Part shown: positions 4,485 to 17,864 of the stretch, one piece after another
Position numbering within the stretch: position 1 is the first letter of the stretch
How the letters are laid out: every line of letters begins with the position of its first letter
Virus record (IMG/VR): IMGVR_UViG_3300023174_000033
Coordinates: 372,001 to 436,000 of that record
Length of the DNA: 64,000 nucleotides
Strand: one strand, 5' to 3'
Program-made: the position numbers and the translations under genes
The notes under the pieces: generated by a model
What the model was told of the DNA's origin: nothing
Seen by the model: the letters and a program-made list of their open reading frames with translations, nothing else
Databases searched by the model: none

Positions 4485-4500
4485 CCACAAGGCGATATGG
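3760..4500 (+). repeat. Coding tandem repeat, ~81-bp unit, ~9 copies
   Basis: Same unit as 1840-2340, counted in the translation. Confidence 0.85.
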
Positions 4501-6074
4501 GACCACAAGGCGATATTGGTTATCAAGGTGTTTCTGGCCCACAGGGATATCAAGGTGAGACTGGCCCACAGGGTGAAACCGGTCCACAAGGTGATATAGG
4601 TTTCCAAGGTGAAAGTGGTCCTCAAGGATATAGTGGTGTGCAAGGTGAAACTGGTCCACAGGGTAGAACTGGTCCACAAGGAATTGGTGGTCCAAAAGGT
4701 AATACCGGAGCTTCTGGTGTGGTTGCAACAGTAACACAAACACCAGTACAGTGGAGATATGAAGGTTTATTCGGAGGTGGCGGGCCGTTCTCGGGTCAAT
4801 TTGAAACTACACCATCTCCTAATTTCTCTAACATTACAGGATTTAGATTTAATGTAAACGACGTTAATAATATCAATTATACAACTTGGTTTAATCAACT
4901 AGAACTATTTGTTAAGAATCAAAACACATCTTATATACAATTGTATGATACAGCTTCTGTAAGTAATGTTGGATTATACCTCGTTACTGGAGCTGCTACA
5001 AGTTCTGGTTTGACTCAAGCTTTCGGTATAAGTGTATCAAGTGTGGCTATAGTTTCAAACGGATCGTTTACAATTGGTAGAACTTATAGCGTAACTTGGA
5101 TTGCATCTGGTCCACAAGGAACTCAAGGAATTCAAGGTATAACCGGCCCACAAGGTGAGACTGGCCCACAGGGTGAAACTGGTCCACAAGGTGAAATTGG
5201 CTTACAAGGTTTCTCTGGACCACAAGGTGAAATTGGCTTACAAGGTAATCTAGGACCACAGGGTGTGCAGGGTGCAGTAGTTCCTTTATCACAAGCAGCT
5301 ACTAGATGGAATTATGTAAGTGGTGGTGTATTGACTCAACAAAATAAATTTATCGCTGATTATGATGATTTATCCCTATTGAGTTGTTTTGAGATAAATT
5401 ACTACGATTCATACAATGTTGAATTTACTAATTGGTTTGTACAACTAGAGAATTTTGTAAGTAATCTACAAACCACTTATCTGTTTGTATCAAATGATGA
5501 TGATCTTACCGTTAGAGGATTTTATAGAATTACTAGTGTATCAAATTCTGGATATGGTTATACTATGAGTGTTATACCATTAGCATTTGGTGGTTCATTT
5601 GTAGATGGTGGAACTTACTCAATTAGTTGGACAGTTGAAGGAACTAAAGGTGAAACTGGTCCACAAGGTGCGTATGGTGGTCCACAGGGTCCACAGGGTC
5701 CTTATCCACTTCCTAACGTGATACAAACATTCTCTAGTGTTCTAACTTATAGTGTAACCCATAATAGCGGAGTTTATCCTTTTGTACAATTGATTGATAA
5801 TATCGGAGAGGTTTTTGTACCAGAAGCGATACTACACACTTCTACGTATTCATTTGACATAACATTCGCTACTGAATCATCTGGTTCTGTGGTTTTAGGT
5901 GGAGCAGTTGGTCCACAAGGTTCAAACGGTGGAGTTCTTGTAGGAACAGTTAGTCCAGCAAATTCTGGTTCAACTGGAACTAAAGGAGAAATTAGAGTTA
6001 ATAATGGTGGTTATATGTATATCCATACAGGTACACAATGGTTGAGATCTTCCACAACTTTCTCTACTTTCTAA
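4497..6074 (+). CDS. In-frame continuation (C-terminal part) of the collagen-like fibre protein
   Basis: Same frame as 45..4484, resuming directly after TGA with CCA CAA GGC GAT ATG. Carries third copies of the globular modules. Confidence 0.8.
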   Translation: MGPQGDIGYQGVSGPQGYQGETGPQGETGPQGDIGFQGESGPQGYSGVQGETGPQGRTGPQGIGGPKGNTGASGVVATVTQTPVQWRYEGLFGGGGPFSGQFETTPSPNFSNITGFRFNVNDVNNINYTTWFNQLELFVKNQNTSYIQLYDTASVSNVGLYLVTGAATSSGLTQAFGISVSSVAIVSNGSFTIGRTYSVTWIASGPQGTQGIQGITGPQGETGPQGETGPQGEIGLQGFSGPQGEIGLQGNLGPQGVQGAVVPLSQAATRWNYVSGGVLTQQNKFIADYDDLSLLSCFEINYYDSYNVEFTNWFVQLENFVSNLQTTYLFVSNDDDLTVRGFYRITSVSNSGYGYTMSVIPLAFGGSFVDGGTYSISWTVEGTKGETGPQGAYGGPQGPQGPYPLPNVIQTFSSVLTYSVTHNSGVYPFVQLIDNIGEVFVPEAILHTSTYSFDITFATESSGSVVLGGAVGPQGSNGGVLVGTVSPANSGSTGTKGEIRVNNGGYMYIHTGTQWLRSSTTFSTF

Positions 6075-6133
6075 TACTTTTCCGAAACATTGGTGTGTTT
6101 TTTATATAAAAGGAAATAAATGAGAAATAAATA

Positions 6134-7090
6134 ATGGAACATATTTTACAAGAAAATAAGGATAGATTCGTAATGTTTCCCTTAAAATATCACGATATTT
6201 GGGAAATGTATAAGACGGCTGAACATTCATTTTGGACAGCAGAAGAAATTGATTTAGCATCAGATTTAGTCGATTGGGATGAAAAGTTAAATAAGGACGA
6301 AAAACATTTTATAAAAATGGTTTTAGCTTTTTTTGCAGCATCCGATGGAATAGTAAATGAAAATCTTGCAGAAAACTTCCTTAAAGAAGTACAATATCCA
6401 GAAGCTAAATCTTTTTATGGATTTCAAATTGCTATGGAAAATGTACATTCTGAAACATATTCTCTTTTAATTGATACTTATATCAAAGATGAAAAGGAGA
6501 AAGGTATGTTGTTCCATGCTATTGATAACTTCCCTTCTATTAAAGAAAAAGCTGATTGGGCATTAAAATGGATTTCTTCCGAATCATTTGCTGAAAGACT
6601 CATTGCATTTGCAGCAGTTGAGGGTATCTTTTTTTCAGGATCCTTTTGTTCTATATTTTGGTTGAAGAAAAGGGGATTAATGCCTGGACTTTCATTTTCA
6701 AATGAATTAATTTCTCGCGACGAAGGATTACATTGTAAATTTGCTTGTTTAATTTATAACAAATACATAAAGAACAAACTTTCAGAAGAAAGAATCAAAG
6801 AAATCATTTGTTCAGCGGTTGATATAGAAAAAGTTTTTATTACAGAATCACTTCCAGTATCACTAATTGGGATGAATTCGGAATTAATGAAACAATATAT
6901 TGAATTTGTTGCTGATTTTTGGTTAAATGAATTAGGATGTTCAAAAGTTTACAATACACAGAATCCTTTTGATTTTATGGATATGATTTCAATTCAGGGC
7001 AAAACCAATTTCTTTGAGAAAAGGGTAGGTGAATATAAAAAGGCTTCTGATAGAACGATTGACTTTGATAATATTGACGTTGATTTTTAA
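6134..7090 (+). CDS. nrdB: Ribonucleotide reductase class Ia beta (R2) subunit
   Basis: [40 protein letters not shown] and RDEGLH di-iron/tyrosyl motifs. Confidence 0.97.
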
Positions 7091-7844: not shown

Positions 7845-7853
7845 TAATATATA
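7845..7853 (+). promoter_or_regulatory. TAATATATA putative late promoter (representative site)
   Basis: Exact motif in the gene-facing orientation at 7845, 17838(-), 24027, 32183, 39028(-), 41903(-), 47133(-), 47610(-), 49384(-), 52280(-), 53927, 56410(-), 62659. Confidence 0.65.
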
Positions 7854-8650: not shown

Positions 8651-9205
8651 ATGCCAGCAAATTCGGAGAAACAAAGAAGATTTATTTGGGCCAAGAGGCG
8701 TGAATATGGAAAGAAAAAATCCACCCCCAAAAAATGGAAGTGGATTTGGAAACCTGAGTGGGTTGATTTGAAAGAGTCTTTTACACATATATCAACATTC
8801 CAACAGTTCAACGAAGGTTATGGAACACTAACAAAGGATGATATGGAATTAATTGATGACTTATGTGTTAGTCTAACTGATGACTGGGATTTAAAGACTG
8901 AGATTAATGGACCTGTATATAGTGGTTCAGAACCTTGTGATGGTTTTTTAAATCTACAAATGTTTGATAGGTTTCATATTCAGTTCTCTATACAACTATA
9001 TCAAAGATTTGATTGGAATGAGAATGGTGAATCATTTGAAACAGATTTAAGAAATCTTATCAATAAAATAAAAAGATTTGGATATGAAATTCAAGAATTT
9101 GTTTGGAATTCTGAATTTCATGGTACAAGAACTTGGTCTTTCCAAATCTCACATACTGATAAACGGTCTGAGGAAATATTCAAATCTAAACCCACTGAAC
9201 TGTAA
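8651..9205 (+). CDS. Hypothetical protein with basic Trp-rich N-terminus and an internal tag-like segment (THISTFQQFNE)
   Basis: ORF track; TATATAAA directly upstream. Confidence 0.7.
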   Translation: MPANSEKQRRFIWAKRREYGKKKSTPKKWKWIWKPEWVDLKESFTHISTFQQFNEGYGTLTKDDMELIDDLCVSLTDDWDLKTEINGPVYSGSEPCDGFLNLQMFDRFHIQFSIQLYQRFDWNENGESFETDLRNLINKIKRFGYEIQEFVWNSEFHGTRTWSFQISHTDKRSEEIFKSKPTEL

Positions 9206-9731
9206 CAAAAGCATCTAAATCTTTACCACCACCATAAGATATAGAACTTTGTAGACATTCTTCTAGGTATTTCAATCCATCTAAGATAGATTCATTTTTA
9301 AATTCTACCAATGTTTTTCTACCTTCAATTCTATTTGACTTACCAGATTGGAAACTTGAAGCACTACCCCAAAATTCTTTATACTTCTTACCACTAACCT
9401 CTACAATGTGCCCTGGTGAATCATTATAACCAGACATTAAACCACCAGTCATAACCATTGTAGCACCAAGTGCAAGTGATTTAGCGATATCACCTGGGTT
9501 TTTGATACCACCATCAGCAATAATAGGCACATTAGCAACAGTTGCACAATGATAAATAGTTGATGCTTGACAATTTCTTGAACCAAACCCAGTTGATGGG
9601 TATGTTGTACATGCTGAGTTGTGAACAATTATGTGTTCTATATTATATGATTCATCATCTTCAACACTCAAGTCCATAACTTCACCAATATAATTTATTT
9701 TTTCAATATTTTCAATTTCAATAAATTCCAT
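9186..9731 (-). CDS. guaC: GMP reductase C-terminal half fused to split-intein C fragment (IntC, 38 aa, 9618-9731)
   Basis: VMDLSVEDDESYNIEHIIVHN|SACTT intein F/G motif ending His-Asn with Ser+1; then PIIADGGIKNPGDIAKSLALGATMVM and GSAS GMPR/IMPDH motifs. Confidence 0.93.
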   Translation of the reverse strand: MEFIEIENIEKINYIGEVMDLSVEDDESYNIEHIIVHNSACTTYPSTGFGSRNCQASTIYHCATVANVPIIADGGIKNPGDIAKSLALGATMVMTGGLMSGYNDSPGHIVEVSGKKYKEFWGSASSFQSGKSNRIEGRKTLVEFKNESILDGLKYLEECLQSSISYGGGKDLDAFVTVQWV

Positions 9732-9843
9732 AATTTTTTAATATTTTTTTATAATTATCATTTTTAATATCAGTTTCCCAAATAGACAATAATCTGTATT
9801 TTTTTTCAACCACATATTCCAATTTTAAATTATCGAATACCAT
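9718..9843 (-). pseudogene. 41-codon C-terminal remnant of a Vsr-like/DUF559-type homing endonuclease
   Basis: Manual translation MVFDNLKLEYVVEKKYRLLSIWETDIKNDNYKKILKNYGIY matches the D..K......Y..L.IWE.D tail. Lies between the intein halves and overlaps the IntC start. Confidence 0.7.
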
Positions 9844-9848
9844 TCTTC

Positions 9849-10670
9849 CTATTCACACTTTATCAAAAGATGTTTATTTTTATCTAAATCTTTTGCCTTT
9901 ATCCAAAATGCAAATTCTAATAGATTTTCATTATTTACTAAATCTTTTTTTGACTTTTCAATAACATAAAATTCATGTAATTCTGTACAGGGTGGTAAAT
10001 TATTAATTTTTAATAACTCTTGTTCTCCATAATAAATATGTTTATCTATAACCTTCTTGTACCTATTTTTATGTGTTAGAACCGAATCACCGATTAAAAT
10101 ATTTTGCAAAGACTTCAATCCTTCAAGTGTTTTAACCTCTGATGTCGGTATAAAGCACCCAGGGCCAATACCTACCTTAATAGCATCTGCACCCCATTTT
10201 TCAAGTTCAAATACAGACTCAACAGTTGACACATTACCAGCAATGATAAATGTGTTTGGCATTTTCTCTTTTAGGAACTTAATCATATTGTACATTTTAT
10301 TAGAATGACCATGTGCAATATCAATTGTTATGAAATCTACTTTTAGTTCATATTTTGTGATTTTATCAATTAGATCATAAGAATCTTGATTCACACCCAA
10401 AGAAATTGATGTCACTAGATTATTCTTATTCATAATATTTATGAATGATATAATCATTTGGTCTGTAAAGAACCTATGTAGGATATAGAAATAACCATTT
10501 TCAGCTAATTTTCTCGCTAATTCTATATCTAAAACACATTCCATATTAGCAGGAACGATTGGAAGTTTGAAAGTATGACCACAAAACTTAACAGATGTAT
10601 CACACTCGGCCCTTGACCCAACAACACATTTTTTTGGTATTAGGTTGATATCATCAAAGTCAAATCGCAT
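9849..10670 (-). CDS. guaC: GMP reductase N-terminal half fused to split-intein N fragment (IntN, 102 aa, 9852-10157)
   Basis: MRFDFDDINLIPKKCVVGSRAECDTSV..FKLPIVPANM is type-2 GuaC-like. IKVGIGPG|CFIPTSEVKT marks intein block A; CTELHEFYV is block B. ATG at 10670 follows the upstream stop. Confidence 0.93.
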   Translation of the reverse strand: MRFDFDDINLIPKKCVVGSRAECDTSVKFCGHTFKLPIVPANMECVLDIELARKLAENGYFYILHRFFTDQMIISFINIMNKNNLVTSISLGVNQDSYDLIDKITKYELKVDFITIDIAHGHSNKMYNMIKFLKEKMPNTFIIAGNVSTVESVFELEKWGADAIKVGIGPGCFIPTSEVKTLEGLKSLQNILIGDSVLTHKNRYKKVIDKHIYYGEQELLKINNLPPCTELHEFYVIEKSKKDLVNNENLLEFAFWIKAKDLDKNKHLLIKCE

Positions 10671-11033: not shown

Positions 11034-12068
11034 TTAAGATATTTCCTTCAATTTTATGAAAAGTTCTCGTTGAGAATCATTTATATTTTTTGGTATGGAA
11101 ACTTTTATTTTCACATAAAGATTGCCAGTTCCATTTGTTTGTCCGTTCTGCATTAGTCTTGGTATTCCCTTGTTTGGAACTGTGTATGTTTTCCCACTTT
11201 CACAACCAGCAAATATTTGCAATATAGATTCACCAAGTGGAGTTTTTATTTTTAAATTTGTACCTAATACGGCATCGTATATACTTATAGTTTCTTCGGA
11301 ATGGAGATCATTTCCCTCTCTTTTAAATTTGTCACTTGGTATTTCTTCAATCATTACCTGTAAATCACCAGGAGTACCTTGTCTAATGTGATTACCATAT
11401 CCTTGCATATTGAATGTCATACCACTAGCAACACCTTTTGGTATATTTACTTCAACTAATTCATCTTTAGAAGAAGTTCCATTTCCATTACAGGTTGAAC
11501 ACCTATTATAAATCGTTCTACCCTCTCCATTACACATATTACAAGGTATTTGTTGGGTTATTGTACCAAAAGGTGTATTTTGAATTACTCTTCTAACTCC
11601 CGATCCATTACATCCTTGACAAGTTCTTTCATCAGTTCCACCTTTTCCATTACAAGGATCACATTTTGTTTGTCTTTTGTATTTTATTTTTTTAATTGAT
11701 CCTTGAATTACCTCTTCTAAAGTTACCTGTACTTGAATTCTCAAATCACCACCCCTACGAGTTCTTTGGTTAGTGAAAGCTCCACCGAAAGGATTTCCAA
11801 AAATATCTCCAAACTGACTGAATATATCATTCATATTGAATCCACCACCACCAAATCTACCTCTATTTGGATCACCACCAAACATATCATACTCCTGTCT
11901 TTTTTGATCATTAGATAATGTTTCATAAGCTTCGGCGGCTTTCTTAAATTTTGTTTCGTCCCCACCTCTGTCAGGATGATATTCTAAAGCTTTCTTTCTA
12001 TAAGCCTTTTTAACATCATCTTGTGATGCAGATTTATCAATCCCTAATATATCGTAATAACTTTCCAT
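11034..12068 (-). CDS. dnaJ: DnaJ chaperone
   Basis: J-domain HPD, G/F-rich region, four CxxCxGxG zinc motifs, C-terminal domain. Confidence 0.97.
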
Positions 12069-12098
12069 ATAAAATATATCTTATTTTTATTTATTTGT

Positions 12099-13785
<1,687 letters not shown>

Positions 13786-13786
13786 A

Positions 13787-14275
13787 TTAATAATTATTGA
13801 AATTTAGTAATTTTTTCACAGCGTTTGTGTTATAAAATTCATAACTTACGTTTTGTACAACTAATTTTGAGATTTCCAGTTCCTTTATATTTTCGGATAA
13901 TTCATCAACGTACTCAATCAAATCTTTCAAAGCATTTGCATAGTTAATTGGTGGTGTCCAATAATCTGGGAACTTCTGAAAAAACTTTTCAATAGCAGTT
14001 TCCAATGATTTTTTCTTAATAAAGAAATTTTCTTTACCTTTTATAGAACGAACTGCCATGAAATGTGTGAGATAATCATTGAATCTGTGAATCAAATTGT
14101 CAGTTTCCATCACTTTTAATAAACCAATAACTATAGCATCTCTTTCAGACAATTCAAATTCAGCATTCTCTTTTAACATTTTTTCAGCTTCCTTCTCTGA
14201 ACCCAAAATATAGTAAGTATAACTATCCCATAGGCAACGTTTCACAATATCCTCAGGCTTTATAATAATTTTCAT
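13787..14275 (-). CDS. Hypothetical protein
   Basis: ORF in operon. Confidence 0.7.
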   Translation of the reverse strand: MKIIIKPEDIVKRCLWDSYTYYILGSEKEAEKMLKENAEFELSERDAIVIGLLKVMETDNLIHRFNDYLTHFMAVRSIKGKENFFIKKKSLETAIEKFFQKFPDYWTPPINYANALKDLIEYVDELSENIKELEISKLVVQNVSYEFYNTNAVKKLLNFNNY

Positions 14276-14321
14276 TAAAATTCTTTATTTTTTTAAATTA
14301 TACTATTTAAGTATAGTAAGT

Positions 14322-14852
14322 TTATTTGGTCTTTTTAGGTTTAAGAGTCATTAACCACCTATCACCATCGTATTTTATTGGGTCTTCAAATTGTGAAATA
14401 TCCATTAAAATTTCATAGAATTTTTCCATCACATTTCTACCTCTTTCAGGCATAGATTTTTGTCTACCCTTTAACCTAACCACACATTTCACTTTATCGC
14501 CATCTTCTAGGAACTCCCTAGCCTTCCTTGCTTTTGTTTGTAAATCATTTATGGCAATCTCGCAACTTAATTGAATCTCTCTCAATTCAATTTTTTGTTG
14601 ACTCTTCTGCTTTAGCTTTTGTGCTTTTTCAAAATCATAGATAAATTTGTTATAATCCTCAATTCTTACGATTGGAGGATCTTGATTTTCATTAATTAAA
14701 ATCAAATCTTTACCCTCTGCTTGAGCTATTTTTGATGCTTCAAATGAGGACATTATCCTTGGTTCTCCTTCACCTACAAGTCTGACTTGTGGGAATCTAA
14801 CCTCGGAATTTAATTTGTGTTTTCTCTCTTTTTGTGGCCTTCTTGGATTCAT
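14322..14852 (-). CDS. infC: Translation initiation factor IF-3
   Basis: NSEVRFPQVRLV, DLILINENQDPPIVRIEDYNKFIY, NDLQTKARKAREFLEDGDKVK, LKGRQ. Confidence 0.93.
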   Translation of the reverse strand: MNPRRPQKERKHKLNSEVRFPQVRLVGEGEPRIMSSFEASKIAQAEGKDLILINENQDPPIVRIEDYNKFIYDFEKAQKLKQKSQQKIELREIQLSCEIAINDLQTKARKAREFLEDGDKVKCVVRLKGRQKSMPERGRNVMEKFYEILMDISQFEDPIKYDGDRWLMTLKPKKTK

Positions 14853-17813: not shown

Positions 17814-17864
17814 TCGTAAAACAAGTATTTAATATTATATATATTAAAAATTTAAAAAATTATT

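What the first reader, a model, noticed from the sequence alone, without database searches (positions are those of the whole stretch)
9718..9843. Fossil of the homing endonuclease: a 41-codon ORF between the intein halves
Seen: not in the ORF track. An ATG 5 nt after the IntN stop opens MVFDNLKLEYVVEKKYRLLSIWETDIKNDNYKKILKNYGIY, whose stop overlaps the IntC start. Known: fractured genes usually carry a free-standing Vsr-like endonuclease between the halves, ending in D..K......GY..L.IWE.D. Inference: the nuclease was deleted, but its 3' end was kept as a translated spacer that couples IntN to IntC expression. This would be a late stage of domestication of a selfish element.
Basis: partly seen in the sequence, partly recalled or inferred. 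Interest (0 to 1): 0.65.

Follow-up and report, generated by a model that had tools for sequence, protein, structure and literature searches.

The report
Leftover stub of a homing endonuclease
The 41-codon reading frame between the two halves of a phage's intein-split GMP reductase gene is the leftover tail of a selfish nuclease gene lost in a recent ~825-bp deletion; it is a clear but expected stage in the decay of such elements.

Summary
The ORF is real: minus strand, 9843..9718, with its ATG 5 nt after the IntN stop. It overlaps the IntC gene by 14 nt; the stop codon itself does not touch the IntC ATG. It lies in a 464.6-kb freshwater phage record.

Origin as a nuclease fossil is strongly supported. 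Close relatives carry a 308-aa endonuclease at exactly this position. It has an I-TevI-like zinc-finger/NUMOD N-terminal part and an EDxHD/Vsr-like catalytic domain. The mini-ORF matches its last 38 residues (77% identity, E 9e-12 in a search of the phage's whole record, the only hit). Only the last catalytic Asp survives, so it cannot cut DNA.

The start codon is not the nuclease's own. It is a leader ATG that the deletion fused in frame.

The intein and relic are 86-96% identical to those of relatives whose host gene is only 67-72% identical. The loss is therefore recent.

The idea of a translated coupling spacer is not supported. This genome uses no Shine-Dalgarno sites, and IntC's A-rich leader, which lies inside the relic's 3' end, scores at the 99th percentile of the genome's gene starts. 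Several other relics lack a start codon. The best reading is a young gene scar whose last ~30 nt are kept because they are IntC's initiation region.

The parts
10158..10670 (-). N-extein of a GMP reductase (GuaC-type, IMPDH/GMPR superfamily), ending ...GADAIKVGIGPG. The likely true start is ATG 10670; the ORF listing extends the frame to TTG 10700.
   Evidence: Pfam IMPDH 2.6e-30. NCBIfam GMP reductase NF003966 3.6e-73. The intein-free homologue L001 starts MKRFDYQDINL.
9852..10157 (-). IntN, 102 aa: Cys1 (CFIPTS...), block B VLTHKN, ending ...HLLIKCE. The stop TAG is at 9849-9851.
   Evidence: Hint-domain hits. Alignment A1 with invariant C1, T28, H29. 68 homologues found.
9844..9848 (-). 5-nt gap (GAAGA) between the IntN stop and the mini-ORF ATG. 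It is part of the conserved leader TAGGAAGAATG that full-length loci share.
9835..9843 (-). ATG GTA TTC: a leader-derived start plus two codons. The same 15 bases (GAAGAATGGTATTCG) follow the IntN stop in L015, where this ATG is in frame with the nuclease. In L014 it opens an 8-codon uORF that ends in ATGA on the nuclease start.
9721..9834 (-). Relic proper: the last 38 codons of the endonuclease gene (D271 to Y308 in L015 numbering). These cover the second half of the long helix, strand LLSIWE and two terminal helices. Only the last of the conserved E-D-H-D residues that align with Vsr's catalytic residues (Asp, equivalent to Vsr D97) is retained. The deletion junction is at 9835/9834, give or take 1 nt.
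   Evidence: L107 is 100% identical from GATAAT onward and continues upstream with nuclease codons.
9718..9843 (-). The 41-codon mini-ORF as a whole (stop TGA 9718-9720).
9732..9756 (-). A-rich, G-free leader of IntC (AATTATAAAAAAATATTAAAAAATT), lying inside the relic's 3' end. This is the inferred translation-initiation region of the IntC gene.
   Evidence: The PWM score is at the 99th percentile of this genome's gene starts. The genome lacks Shine-Dalgarno sites. No RNA structure, z +1.2.
9618..9731 (-). IntC, 38 aa (MEFIEIEN...IIVHN). Its first 14 nt overlap the mini-ORF.
   Evidence: Pfam Intein_splicing, weak. tblastn finds IntC hits in about 85 of the loci; the strongest are in the IMPDH-context loci, up to 89% identity.
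9186..9617 (-). C-extein of GMP reductase, starting at Ser+1 (SACTTYPSTGFG..., the catalytic-Cys loop); includes the stop codon.
   Evidence: The intein-free L001 reads GIGPGSACTTY.

Best explanation
The mini-ORF is a young gene scar.

What was there before: the GMP-reductase gene of this jumbo phage carried the mobile cassette known from 'fractured genes'. In that cassette a split intein has a free-standing EDxHD/Vsr-like homing endonuclease gene between IntN and IntC.

What happened: one deletion of about 825 bp (275 codons relative to an L015-like allele) removed three things. These are the nuclease's own promoter-like TAATATATA box, its zinc-finger/NUMOD DNA-binding part, and three of its four conserved Vsr-equivalent catalytic residues (E, D, H). 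By chance the deletion fused a leader ATG plus two codons in frame with the last 38 codons.

What remains: a stub that cannot be a nuclease.

Why the 3' end survives (inferred): the nuclease gene ends inside the IntC gene, and its last ~25-30 nt are IntC's A-rich, Shine-Dalgarno-free initiation region. A deletion reaching further would silence the C-half of an enzyme split at its catalytic loop. The upstream ~85 nt of the stub are unconstrained leftover.

Translation: ribosomes finishing IntN may well read the stub, since its ATG is 5 nt after the stop. That is a by-product, not a selected coupling device.

Shown: homology, position, deletion junctions, loss of catalytic residues, youth of the relic, start-context scores.
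Inferred: why the 3' end is retained, and the neutrality of the rest.
For: 1. Full-length 297-317-aa ORFs lie between the same IntN and IntC in L009, L012, L014/L093/L094, L015, L016, L019, L021, L023, L024 and L054. They end ...LWETDIKN.NYK.IL, overlapping IntC.
2. The mini-ORF aligns with their last 38 residues.
3. Family identity of the full-length protein:
   - PDB profile search: I-TevI DNA-binding domain 2e-5, Vsr 1e-3, with invariant E199, D226, H244, D271 aligned to Vsr E25, D51, H69, D97.
   - AlphaFold model with pLDDT 81. Best fold match is I-Bth0305I 3R3P (TM 0.80 over the target), then Vsr.
4. Junctions:
   - The window shares GAAGAATGGTATTCG with the L015 leader and then jumps to GATAAT... 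of the nuclease 3' end.
   - L107 and a contig of run X5 carry the nuclease codons (...LNETQRYKVN) that the window lacks, directly upstream of an otherwise identical relic.
5. Youth:
   - Nucleotide identity to L007/L014/L015 is 67-72% for exteins, 86-90% for IntN/IntC and 90-96% for the relic.
   - Identity to L107 is 100% over the shared part.
6. A deletion series keeps the 3' end every time: 98 aa (L010), ~78 (L017), 61 (L107), 41 (window), 23 (L007). There is also an independent relic of a different nuclease lineage (L101 from L099, 1 mismatch in 120 nt).
7. 23 of 24 full-length nuclease genes overlap the IntC start by 4-68 nt. Dassa 2009 reports the same.
8. Upstream of 383 long ORFs, G is 4-10% and A is 50-56%, and AGGA/GGAG are not enriched. 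The IntC leader is at the 99th percentile and the mini-ORF ATG at the 15th.
9. There is no other copy of the nuclease in the 464.6-kb record.
Against: - The stub does have an ATG 5 nt after the IntN stop and ends just after the IntC start. The closely related 23-codon relic in L007 is fused in frame to the same ATG.
- L010 and L022 also have ATG-started ORFs that bridge the whole spacer. Some selection for a bridging ORF therefore cannot be excluded.
- Neutrality cannot be tested by substitution patterns, because the relic has hardly diverged.
- That the last ~30 nt act as the initiation region rests on a position-weight score, not on an experiment.
- No contig from the independent runs laid (X2, X4, X5) spans the exact junction. 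Support for it comes from the source sample: its independent Logan assembly holds 0.99 of the sampled words.
Confidence: 0.72

Rival explanations
1. One reading: the stub is maintained by selection as a translated spacer. Ribosomes terminate at the IntN TAG, restart 5 nt later, terminate at TGA 9720-9718, and restart at the IntC ATG 8 nt upstream. This relay would tie IntC synthesis to IntN synthesis and give about 1:1 intein halves.
For: - The geometry fits termination-reinitiation: a 5-nt gap and a 14-nt overlap.
- L007's shorter relic keeps the same ATG and frame.
- L010 (TAATG) and L022 have ATG-started ORFs bridging the spacer.
- In L014 an 8-codon uORF from the same ATG ends in ATGA on the nuclease start, so relays may be native to the cassette.
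- Genes in this phage are tightly packed.
Against: - IntC has a top-percentile native start context, and the genome does not use Shine-Dalgarno sites, so no coupling is needed.
- The mini-ORF's own start context is poor.
- In L101 and L017 the relic is out of frame with the leader ATG. L101, like L026 and L018, has no canonical start in the relic frame at all, while L017's frame holds only TTG codons. All of these loci keep IntC.
- An in-frame fusion has a chance of about 1 in 3. The tree cannot show that the window and L007 deletions are independent.
- The relic is identical to L107 and 90-96% identical to live nuclease genes, so an intact frame needs no selection.
Confidence: 0.15
2. The stub matters as DNA, not as a coding sequence. 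By leaving 117 bp between the IntN end and the IntC start, it keeps the nuclease's recognition site interrupted. The HEG-free allele would then be immune to re-invasion, unlike a precisely re-fused mini-intein.
For: - Homing endonucleases cut the empty site, which is general knowledge about homing.
- Contiguous mini-intein alleles of the same intein exist and would present an uninterrupted site (P0049, L025, L096 and others).
- Longer-nuclease, relic and intein-free alleles (the last in a related phage) occur in the same lakes.
Against: - The target site of this nuclease is unknown.
- Any leftover length would serve, so this does not explain the ORF.
- L018 shows a relic-bearing spacer that still acquired about 600 bp of foreign DNA.
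- This reading is compatible with the scar reading rather than opposed to it.
Confidence: 0.1
3. It is a chance open frame in AT-rich intergenic DNA, or an assembly artefact, unrelated to any nuclease.
For: - Pfam finds nothing in the peptide.
- The PHROG hit is weak (E 0.055).
- Contigs in runs X2 and X4 break around the intein.
Against: - Whole-record tblastn gives E 9e-12, at the syntenic position and with matching junctions.
- A second assembly of the source sample holds 99% of the sampled words.
- The junction has only 1-2 nt of microhomology, so a k-mer assembler would not invent it.
Confidence: 0.02

Closest known systems
Fractured genes of Dassa et al. 2009 (PMC2677866), especially the IMPDH loci (IMPDH-1 split intein) and the endonuclease-less gp41-7 locus (their model's step III)
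   Same: - An enzyme of the IMPDH/GMPR family is split by a split intein, with halves adjacent on one strand.
- The insertion point is the same in the catalytic loop: published IMPDH-1 junction GGG/SIC (supplement of PMC7090010) against GPG/SAC here.
- A Vsr-like nuclease sits between the halves in relatives.
- The nuclease's 3' end overlaps the IntC start.
- A promoter-like box lies upstream of the nuclease.
- Loss of the nuclease is already foreseen in their model.
   Different: - Here the nuclease is neither present nor cleanly gone: 38 of its codons remain, fused to a leader ATG.
- The host enzyme is GMP reductase by NCBIfam, not IMPDH proper.
- The intein is only about 40% identical to the clade (L101/L103) whose IntC starts MKFKLKEI. 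From memory that resembles the published IMPDH-1; this was not checked.
I-Bth0305I, the EDxHD family of homing endonucleases (PMC3239194; PDB 3R3P), and E. coli Vsr (1CW0)
   Same: The full-length relatives share the fold (TM 0.80 to 3R3P), the E/D/H/D residues and an N-terminal NUMOD-type DNA-binding part.
   Different: - The window's peptide keeps only the last Asp and the C-terminal strand and helices. It is a fragment, not a member.
- The relatives are free-standing between intein halves, whereas I-Bth0305I is intron-encoded.
The homing cycle (invasion, fixation, degeneration, loss of homing endonuclease genes; Goddard and Burt 1999, from my own knowledge)
   Same: A degenerate nuclease gene sits in a fixed element, while active, empty and decayed alleles occur across related phages in the same lakes.
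   Different: Decay here is by large deletions whose right-hand end is limited by the overlapping downstream gene, which gives a series of 3' stubs.
Translationally coupled overlapping genes (termination-reinitiation, ATGA-type overlaps)
   Same: There is a short gap after the upstream stop, and the stop of the stub lies just after the downstream start.
   Different: The downstream start has a strong context of its own, and ORF integrity is not conserved across independent relics. Coupling is unproven.

Membership tests
Fractured gene (split intein with a free-standing homing endonuclease gene between the halves) | The host gene is cut at an intein insertion point, with the two halves adjacent on the same strand | tested here: met
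   The N-half is 10670-9849 and the C-half 9731-9186, both on the minus strand. The intein-free homologue L001 reads GIGPGSACTTY across the site.
Fractured gene (split intein with a free-standing homing endonuclease gene between the halves) | Splicing residues: Cys1, block B T-x-x-H, C-terminal His-Asn and a +1 nucleophile | tested here: met
   CFIPTS..., VLTHKN...IVHN|S.
Fractured gene (split intein with a free-standing homing endonuclease gene between the halves) | A complete endonuclease ORF between IntN and IntC | tested here: not met
   Only 38 terminal codons remain in the window. The ORF is complete in relatives L014, L015, L009 and others.
Fractured gene (split intein with a free-standing homing endonuclease gene between the halves) | Overlap of the endonuclease 3' end with the start of the IntC gene | tested here: met
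   The overlap is 14 nt in the window and 4-68 nt in 23 of 24 full-length loci.
Fractured gene (split intein with a free-standing homing endonuclease gene between the halves) | Protein trans-splicing restores the enzyme | not testable with these tools
   Needs expression of both halves.
EDxHD / Vsr-like homing endonucleases (I-Bth0305I) | Vsr-like nuclease fold | tested here: met
   Tested on the full-length relative L015. The model has pLDDT 81. Foldseek best hit is 3R3P (E 2e-4, TM 0.80 over the target), then 1CW0. The window peptide covers only the last ~38 residues of that domain.
EDxHD / Vsr-like homing endonucleases (I-Bth0305I) | Conserved catalytic E, D, H, D | tested here: not met
   Relatives have invariant E199, D226, H244 and D271 aligned to Vsr E25, D51, H69 and D97. 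The window retains only D4, which equals D271.
EDxHD / Vsr-like homing endonucleases (I-Bth0305I) | N-terminal NUMOD / zinc-finger DNA-binding region | tested here: not met
   Present in relatives: NUMOD3 5e-5 and the I-TevI DNA-binding domain 2e-5. Deleted in the window.
Pfam Vsr (PF03852) / DUF559 (PF04480) | Score above the family's gathering threshold | tested here: not met
   The peptide gives no hit at E up to 10. Full-length relatives score 15.6-21.6 bits against a cut-off of 27 for Vsr, and 16.8 against 20.6 for DUF559. NCBIfam vsr scores 23 bits against 97.85.
Translationally coupled bridging ORF | The downstream gene lacks an adequate initiation signal of its own | tested here: not met
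   The IntC leader is at the 99th percentile of this genome's gene starts. No Shine-Dalgarno sites are used genome-wide.
Translationally coupled bridging ORF | The bridging ORF (start, frame, stop position) is conserved across independent relics | tested here: inconclusive
   ATG-started bridging ORFs: window, L007, L010, L022. L107's relic is ATG-started but has no IntN upstream. Start-less: L101, L026, L018. L017's relic is out of frame with the leader ATG. L017 and L034 have only TTG. Independence of the window and L007 events is unresolved.
Translationally coupled bridging ORF | IntC output depends on translation of the stub | not testable with these tools
   Needs reporter assays or ribosome profiling.

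The most novel reading that the evidence does not exclude
In Shine-Dalgarno-free phages, the nuclease cassette of fractured genes may be built as a termination-reinitiation relay: IntN stop, leader ATG, nuclease, overlap, IntC. After the nuclease is lost, selection would keep a minimal in-frame bridging ORF so that the two intein halves are still made in equal amounts. The window and L007 would then be two such domesticated 'relay' ORFs rather than neutral scars.
Probability: 0.12. Interest if true: 0.55.

Novelty: new member of a known kind. Interest (0 to 1): 0.33.

Why it matters
The locus gives a clean, datable snapshot of how a selfish nuclease gene decays inside a split-intein 'fractured gene'.
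- Deletions remove the nuclease, but they always stop short of the 3' end that overlaps the downstream IntC gene.
- Together with the relatives, this forms a natural series. It runs from the full gene through stubs of 98, 78, 61, 41 and 23 codons; contiguous mini-inteins and an intein-free allele complete the range.
- The series fills the gap between steps II and III of the published model for the origin of split inteins.

It is also a practical warning for annotation: such stubs are not small genes. Finally, the relatives supply new natural split and contiguous variants of the IMPDH-type intein that protein engineers use.

Tried and rejected
- Pfam on the peptide at E up to 10: nothing. PHROGs: only a weak 'HNH endonuclease' hit, E 0.055.
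- First viral-contig scan with the C-half: found only intein-free or distant GMP reductases.
- phmmer of the peptide against 1.84 billion representatives: three useful short relatives (P0072, P0075, P0076) and two spurious repeat proteins (P0073, P0074), which I discarded.
- Search of the phage's own record for an intact paralogue of the nuclease or a second intein of this type: none. The second hit (E 0.02, with a stop inside) is A-rich chance.
- RNA fold of the spacer: less stable than shuffles (z +1.2), so no hairpin regulates the IntC start.
- Tree of IntN+IntC: the window, L007, L014 and L015 form a supported clade that is unresolved inside. It cannot tell whether the window and L007 deletions are one event or two.
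- dN/dS on the relic: not attempted as a test, because there are too few differences (0 against L107, 2 against L007).
- DNA for the 98%-identical P0001 locus (235-nt spacer) and the P0075 locus (nuclease in three frameshifted pieces): not available.
- Laid contigs of X2 and X4: they do not span the relic. The short-sided joints in X2 and X4 (22-28 nt) were ignored as unreliable.
- The L022 spacer: only doubtfully homologous to a nuclease 3' end.

Full report
**Setting.** The window is bases 372001-436000 of a 464,605-bp virus record (98% complete by CheckV, GC 32%) from a lake-water metagenome. Near the locus it encodes IF3, GrpE, adenylosuccinate synthetase, DnaJ, a ribonucleotide reductase small subunit and a collagen-repeat protein. 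I read it as a jumbo phage.

**The observation.** Everything lies on the minus strand.
- The N-half of a GMP reductase gene runs from 10670 (probable ATG; the ORF listing extends the frame to TTG 10700).
- At GIGPG it continues into a 102-residue IntN (CFIPTS...VLTHKN...HLLIKCE), which stops at TAG 9851-9849.
- The IntC gene starts at ATG 9731 (MEFIEIEN...IVHN) and continues into the C-extein SACTTYPS... down to 9186.
- The two frames overlap by 14 nt. The stop codon itself does not lie on the start codon.
- An intein-free homologue (L001, 314 aa, GMP reductase at 409 bits against a cut-off of 344) reads GIGPGSACTTY across the site.
- The published IMPDH-1 split intein has the junction GGG/SIC, the same position in the catalytic-Cys loop (supplement of PMC7090010).

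**What the stub is.** The peptile itself matches nothing in Pfam. The answer came from relatives.
- A search with the IntN region found 68 N-half proteins. Their contigs, plus 94 loci from metagenome and viral scans, show what lies between IntN and IntC elsewhere.
- In the closest clade (L014/L093/L094 and L015; IntN 82-92% identical) and in L009, L016, L012, L054, L019, L021, L023 and L024 there is an ORF of 297-317 codons. It ends ...LWETDIKN.NYK.IL and overlaps the IntC start.
- The mini-ORF aligns with its last 38 residues. BLASTP gives 1e-10 to P0069.
- tblastn of the L015 protein against the whole phage record hits only this spot: residues 270-308, 77% identity, E 9e-12.

**Nature of the full-length protein.**
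- A profile of ten copies matches the I-TevI DNA-binding domain (2e-5) and E. coli Vsr (1e-3).
- The invariant E199, D226, H244 and D271 fall on Vsr E25, D51, H69 and D97.
- An AlphaFold model (pLDDT 81) has the I-Bth0305I catalytic domain 3R3P as best fold match (TM 0.80 over the target), followed by Vsr.
- This is the Vsr-like or 'EDxHD' homing endonuclease family of Dassa 2009 and Taylor 2011.
- The window keeps only D271 (its D4), half a helix, the strand LLSIWE and two short helices. It cannot be a nuclease.

**How it arose.**
- In L015 the bases after the IntN stop read GAAGAATGGTATTCG, then TAATATATAGAAAT, then the nuclease ATG.
- The window has the same first 15 bases and then jumps to GATAATTTAAAA..., which is codon 271 onward.
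- The stub's ATG is therefore a leader ATG. It is in frame with the nuclease in L015 and L016. In L014 it opens an 8-codon uORF that ends in ATGA on the nuclease start. In L017 it is followed at once by TAG.
- The spacer is 117 nt here against 941-942 nt in L014 and L015. That is a deletion of 825 nt (275 codons) relative to L015.
- The deletion also removed TAATATATA. This box precedes every full-length nuclease gene. It is promoter-like in this phage: 14 copies in the window against 2.2 expected, and it stands upstream of 8.6% of long ORFs against 0.1% background.
- L107 carries a 61-codon version that is 100% identical to the window from GATAAT onward and continues upstream with nuclease codons.
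- A contig of freshwater run X5 matches 9558-9836 with 2 differences and then runs on into ...LNETQRYKVN. Another X5 contig joins 9608 to 10165 through PGSAC; this is an intein-free allele of a related phage, about 91% identical on its N-extein side.

**Age.** Nucleotide identity against L007, L014 and L015 is as follows.

| Segment | Identity |
|---|---|
| Exteins | 67-72% |
| IntN and IntC | 86-90% |
| Shared relic | 90-96% |

The intein-nuclease cassette has therefore moved between diverged phages recently, and the deletion is younger still. An intact frame in the stub needs no selection.

**A series of stubs.** Other loci keep 98 codons (L010), about 78 (L017), 61 (L107) and 23 (L007/L008, MSIWETDIKNDNYKKIFKNYGIY, fused to the same leader ATG). 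One locus has the nuclease in three frameshifted pieces (P0075). L101 is an independent case from another nuclease lineage. It differs from L099 by one internal deletion, and its relic has 1 mismatch in 120 nt. All deletions stop short of the IntC start. Of 24 full-length nuclease genes, 23 overlap that start by 4-68 nt, as Dassa 2009 noted.

**Does the stub couple translation?** The geometry allows termination-reinitiation, but four results speak against a selected role.
1. Upstream of 383 long ORFs of this genome, G is depleted (4-10%) and A is enriched (50-56%). AGGA and GGAG are not enriched, so there is no Shine-Dalgarno signal.
2. On a weight matrix of those upstream regions, the 25 nt before the IntC ATG score at the 99th percentile of real gene starts. 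The 25 nt before the stub's ATG score at the 15th percentile. The region has no RNA structure.
3. In L101 and L017 the relic is out of frame with the leader ATG. L101, L026 and L018 have no canonical start in the relic frame, while L017 and L034 have only TTG codons. About half of roughly ten relics are ATG-started ORFs (window, L007, L010, L022, L107). That is not clearly above chance, and the tree cannot show that the window and L007 events are independent.
4. The relic is too young to test by substitutions.

**Conclusion.** The stub is a scar. Its last ~25-30 nt are retained because they are IntC's initiation region, and its last 14 nt because they are IntC's first codons. The rest is leftover.
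- I give this reading 0.72.
- The coupling idea gets 0.15.
- An 'immunity to re-invasion' role of the interrupted site gets about 0.1. It is not exclusive of the scar reading.

**Comparison with what is known.** Dassa 2009 described the fractured-gene arrangement, the IMPDH loci, the Vsr-like nucleases and the 3' overlaps. Their model also includes loss of the nuclease as step III (locus gp41-7). The present locus is an intermediate between their steps II and III in a new phage lineage. It is a new member of a known kind, well documented but not surprising to a specialist.

**Limits.**
- The exact junction is supported only by the source sample, although two assemblies of it agree.
- The host is unknown.

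Noticed in passing
P0049, P0066; L025, L033, L040, L059, L096, L106 (intein junctions): Contiguous mini-intein versions of the same GMP-reductase intein exist. Two of them (P0049 ...HLIIKK|MEFIEIE, L025 ...HLLIKN|MELIEIE) keep a Met exactly where the IntC gene starts in split forms. They may be re-fusions of a split intein after precise loss of the spacer. The others have no junction Met and look ancestral.
   Followed up: partly
L042, L046, L027, L030, L031, L050, L095, L099, L104 (between IntN and IntC): Several unrelated nuclease gene types occupy the same IntN/IntC gap in other clades. L042 and L046 carry 236-237-aa ORFs that look HNH-like by their C-terminal motif. Others end ...C[DEK]F.RIK or ...YRVREDE. 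This indicates repeated invasion or replacement at one site.
   Followed up: partly
L018:2810-3492: The spacer holds a short relic (WETDIKNDNFKKILKENGVY). It is preceded by a second, degenerate copy of the IntN-end/leader motif and about 600 nt of unrelated DNA with two small ORFs (83 and 69 aa). A relic-bearing spacer has picked up new cargo.
   Followed up: partly
L107 (772-nt contig): A 61-codon relic plus the IntC half, with no IntN upstream. The upstream 300 nt are unrelated. This could be genomic uncoupling of the halves (Dassa's step IV), a rearrangement, or a chimeric contig.
   Followed up: no
whole record G000; window 7845-7853, 17838-17846 and 12 other sites: TAATATATA is strongly over-represented: 14 copies in the window against 2.2 expected. 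It lies just upstream of 8.6% of long ORFs, so it is probably a phage promoter element.
   Followed up: partly
whole record G000: Gene starts have no Shine-Dalgarno signal. Their leaders are A-rich and G-poor, as in hosts that initiate without Shine-Dalgarno sites. This may hint at the host group.
   Followed up: partly
window 9558-9836 and 9608/10165, in run X5: One freshwater run holds two other forms of the locus. One contig carries nuclease sequence beyond the window's breakpoint and is nearly identical to the window in its flank. Another carries an intein-free allele of a related phage (about 91% identical). In X2 the contigs break around the intein.
   Followed up: partly
window 11034-14852 (-), 4497-7090 (+): The phage encodes IF3, GrpE, DnaJ and adenylosuccinate synthetase in a row upstream of the split GMP reductase. 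Nearby are an RNR small subunit and a 525-aa collagen-repeat protein.
   Followed up: no
L108:598-1094: A free-standing nuclease of the same family lies outside any IMPDH context. It has a frameshift before its last 40 codons (P0076) and is followed by a terminator-like hairpin.
   Followed up: no
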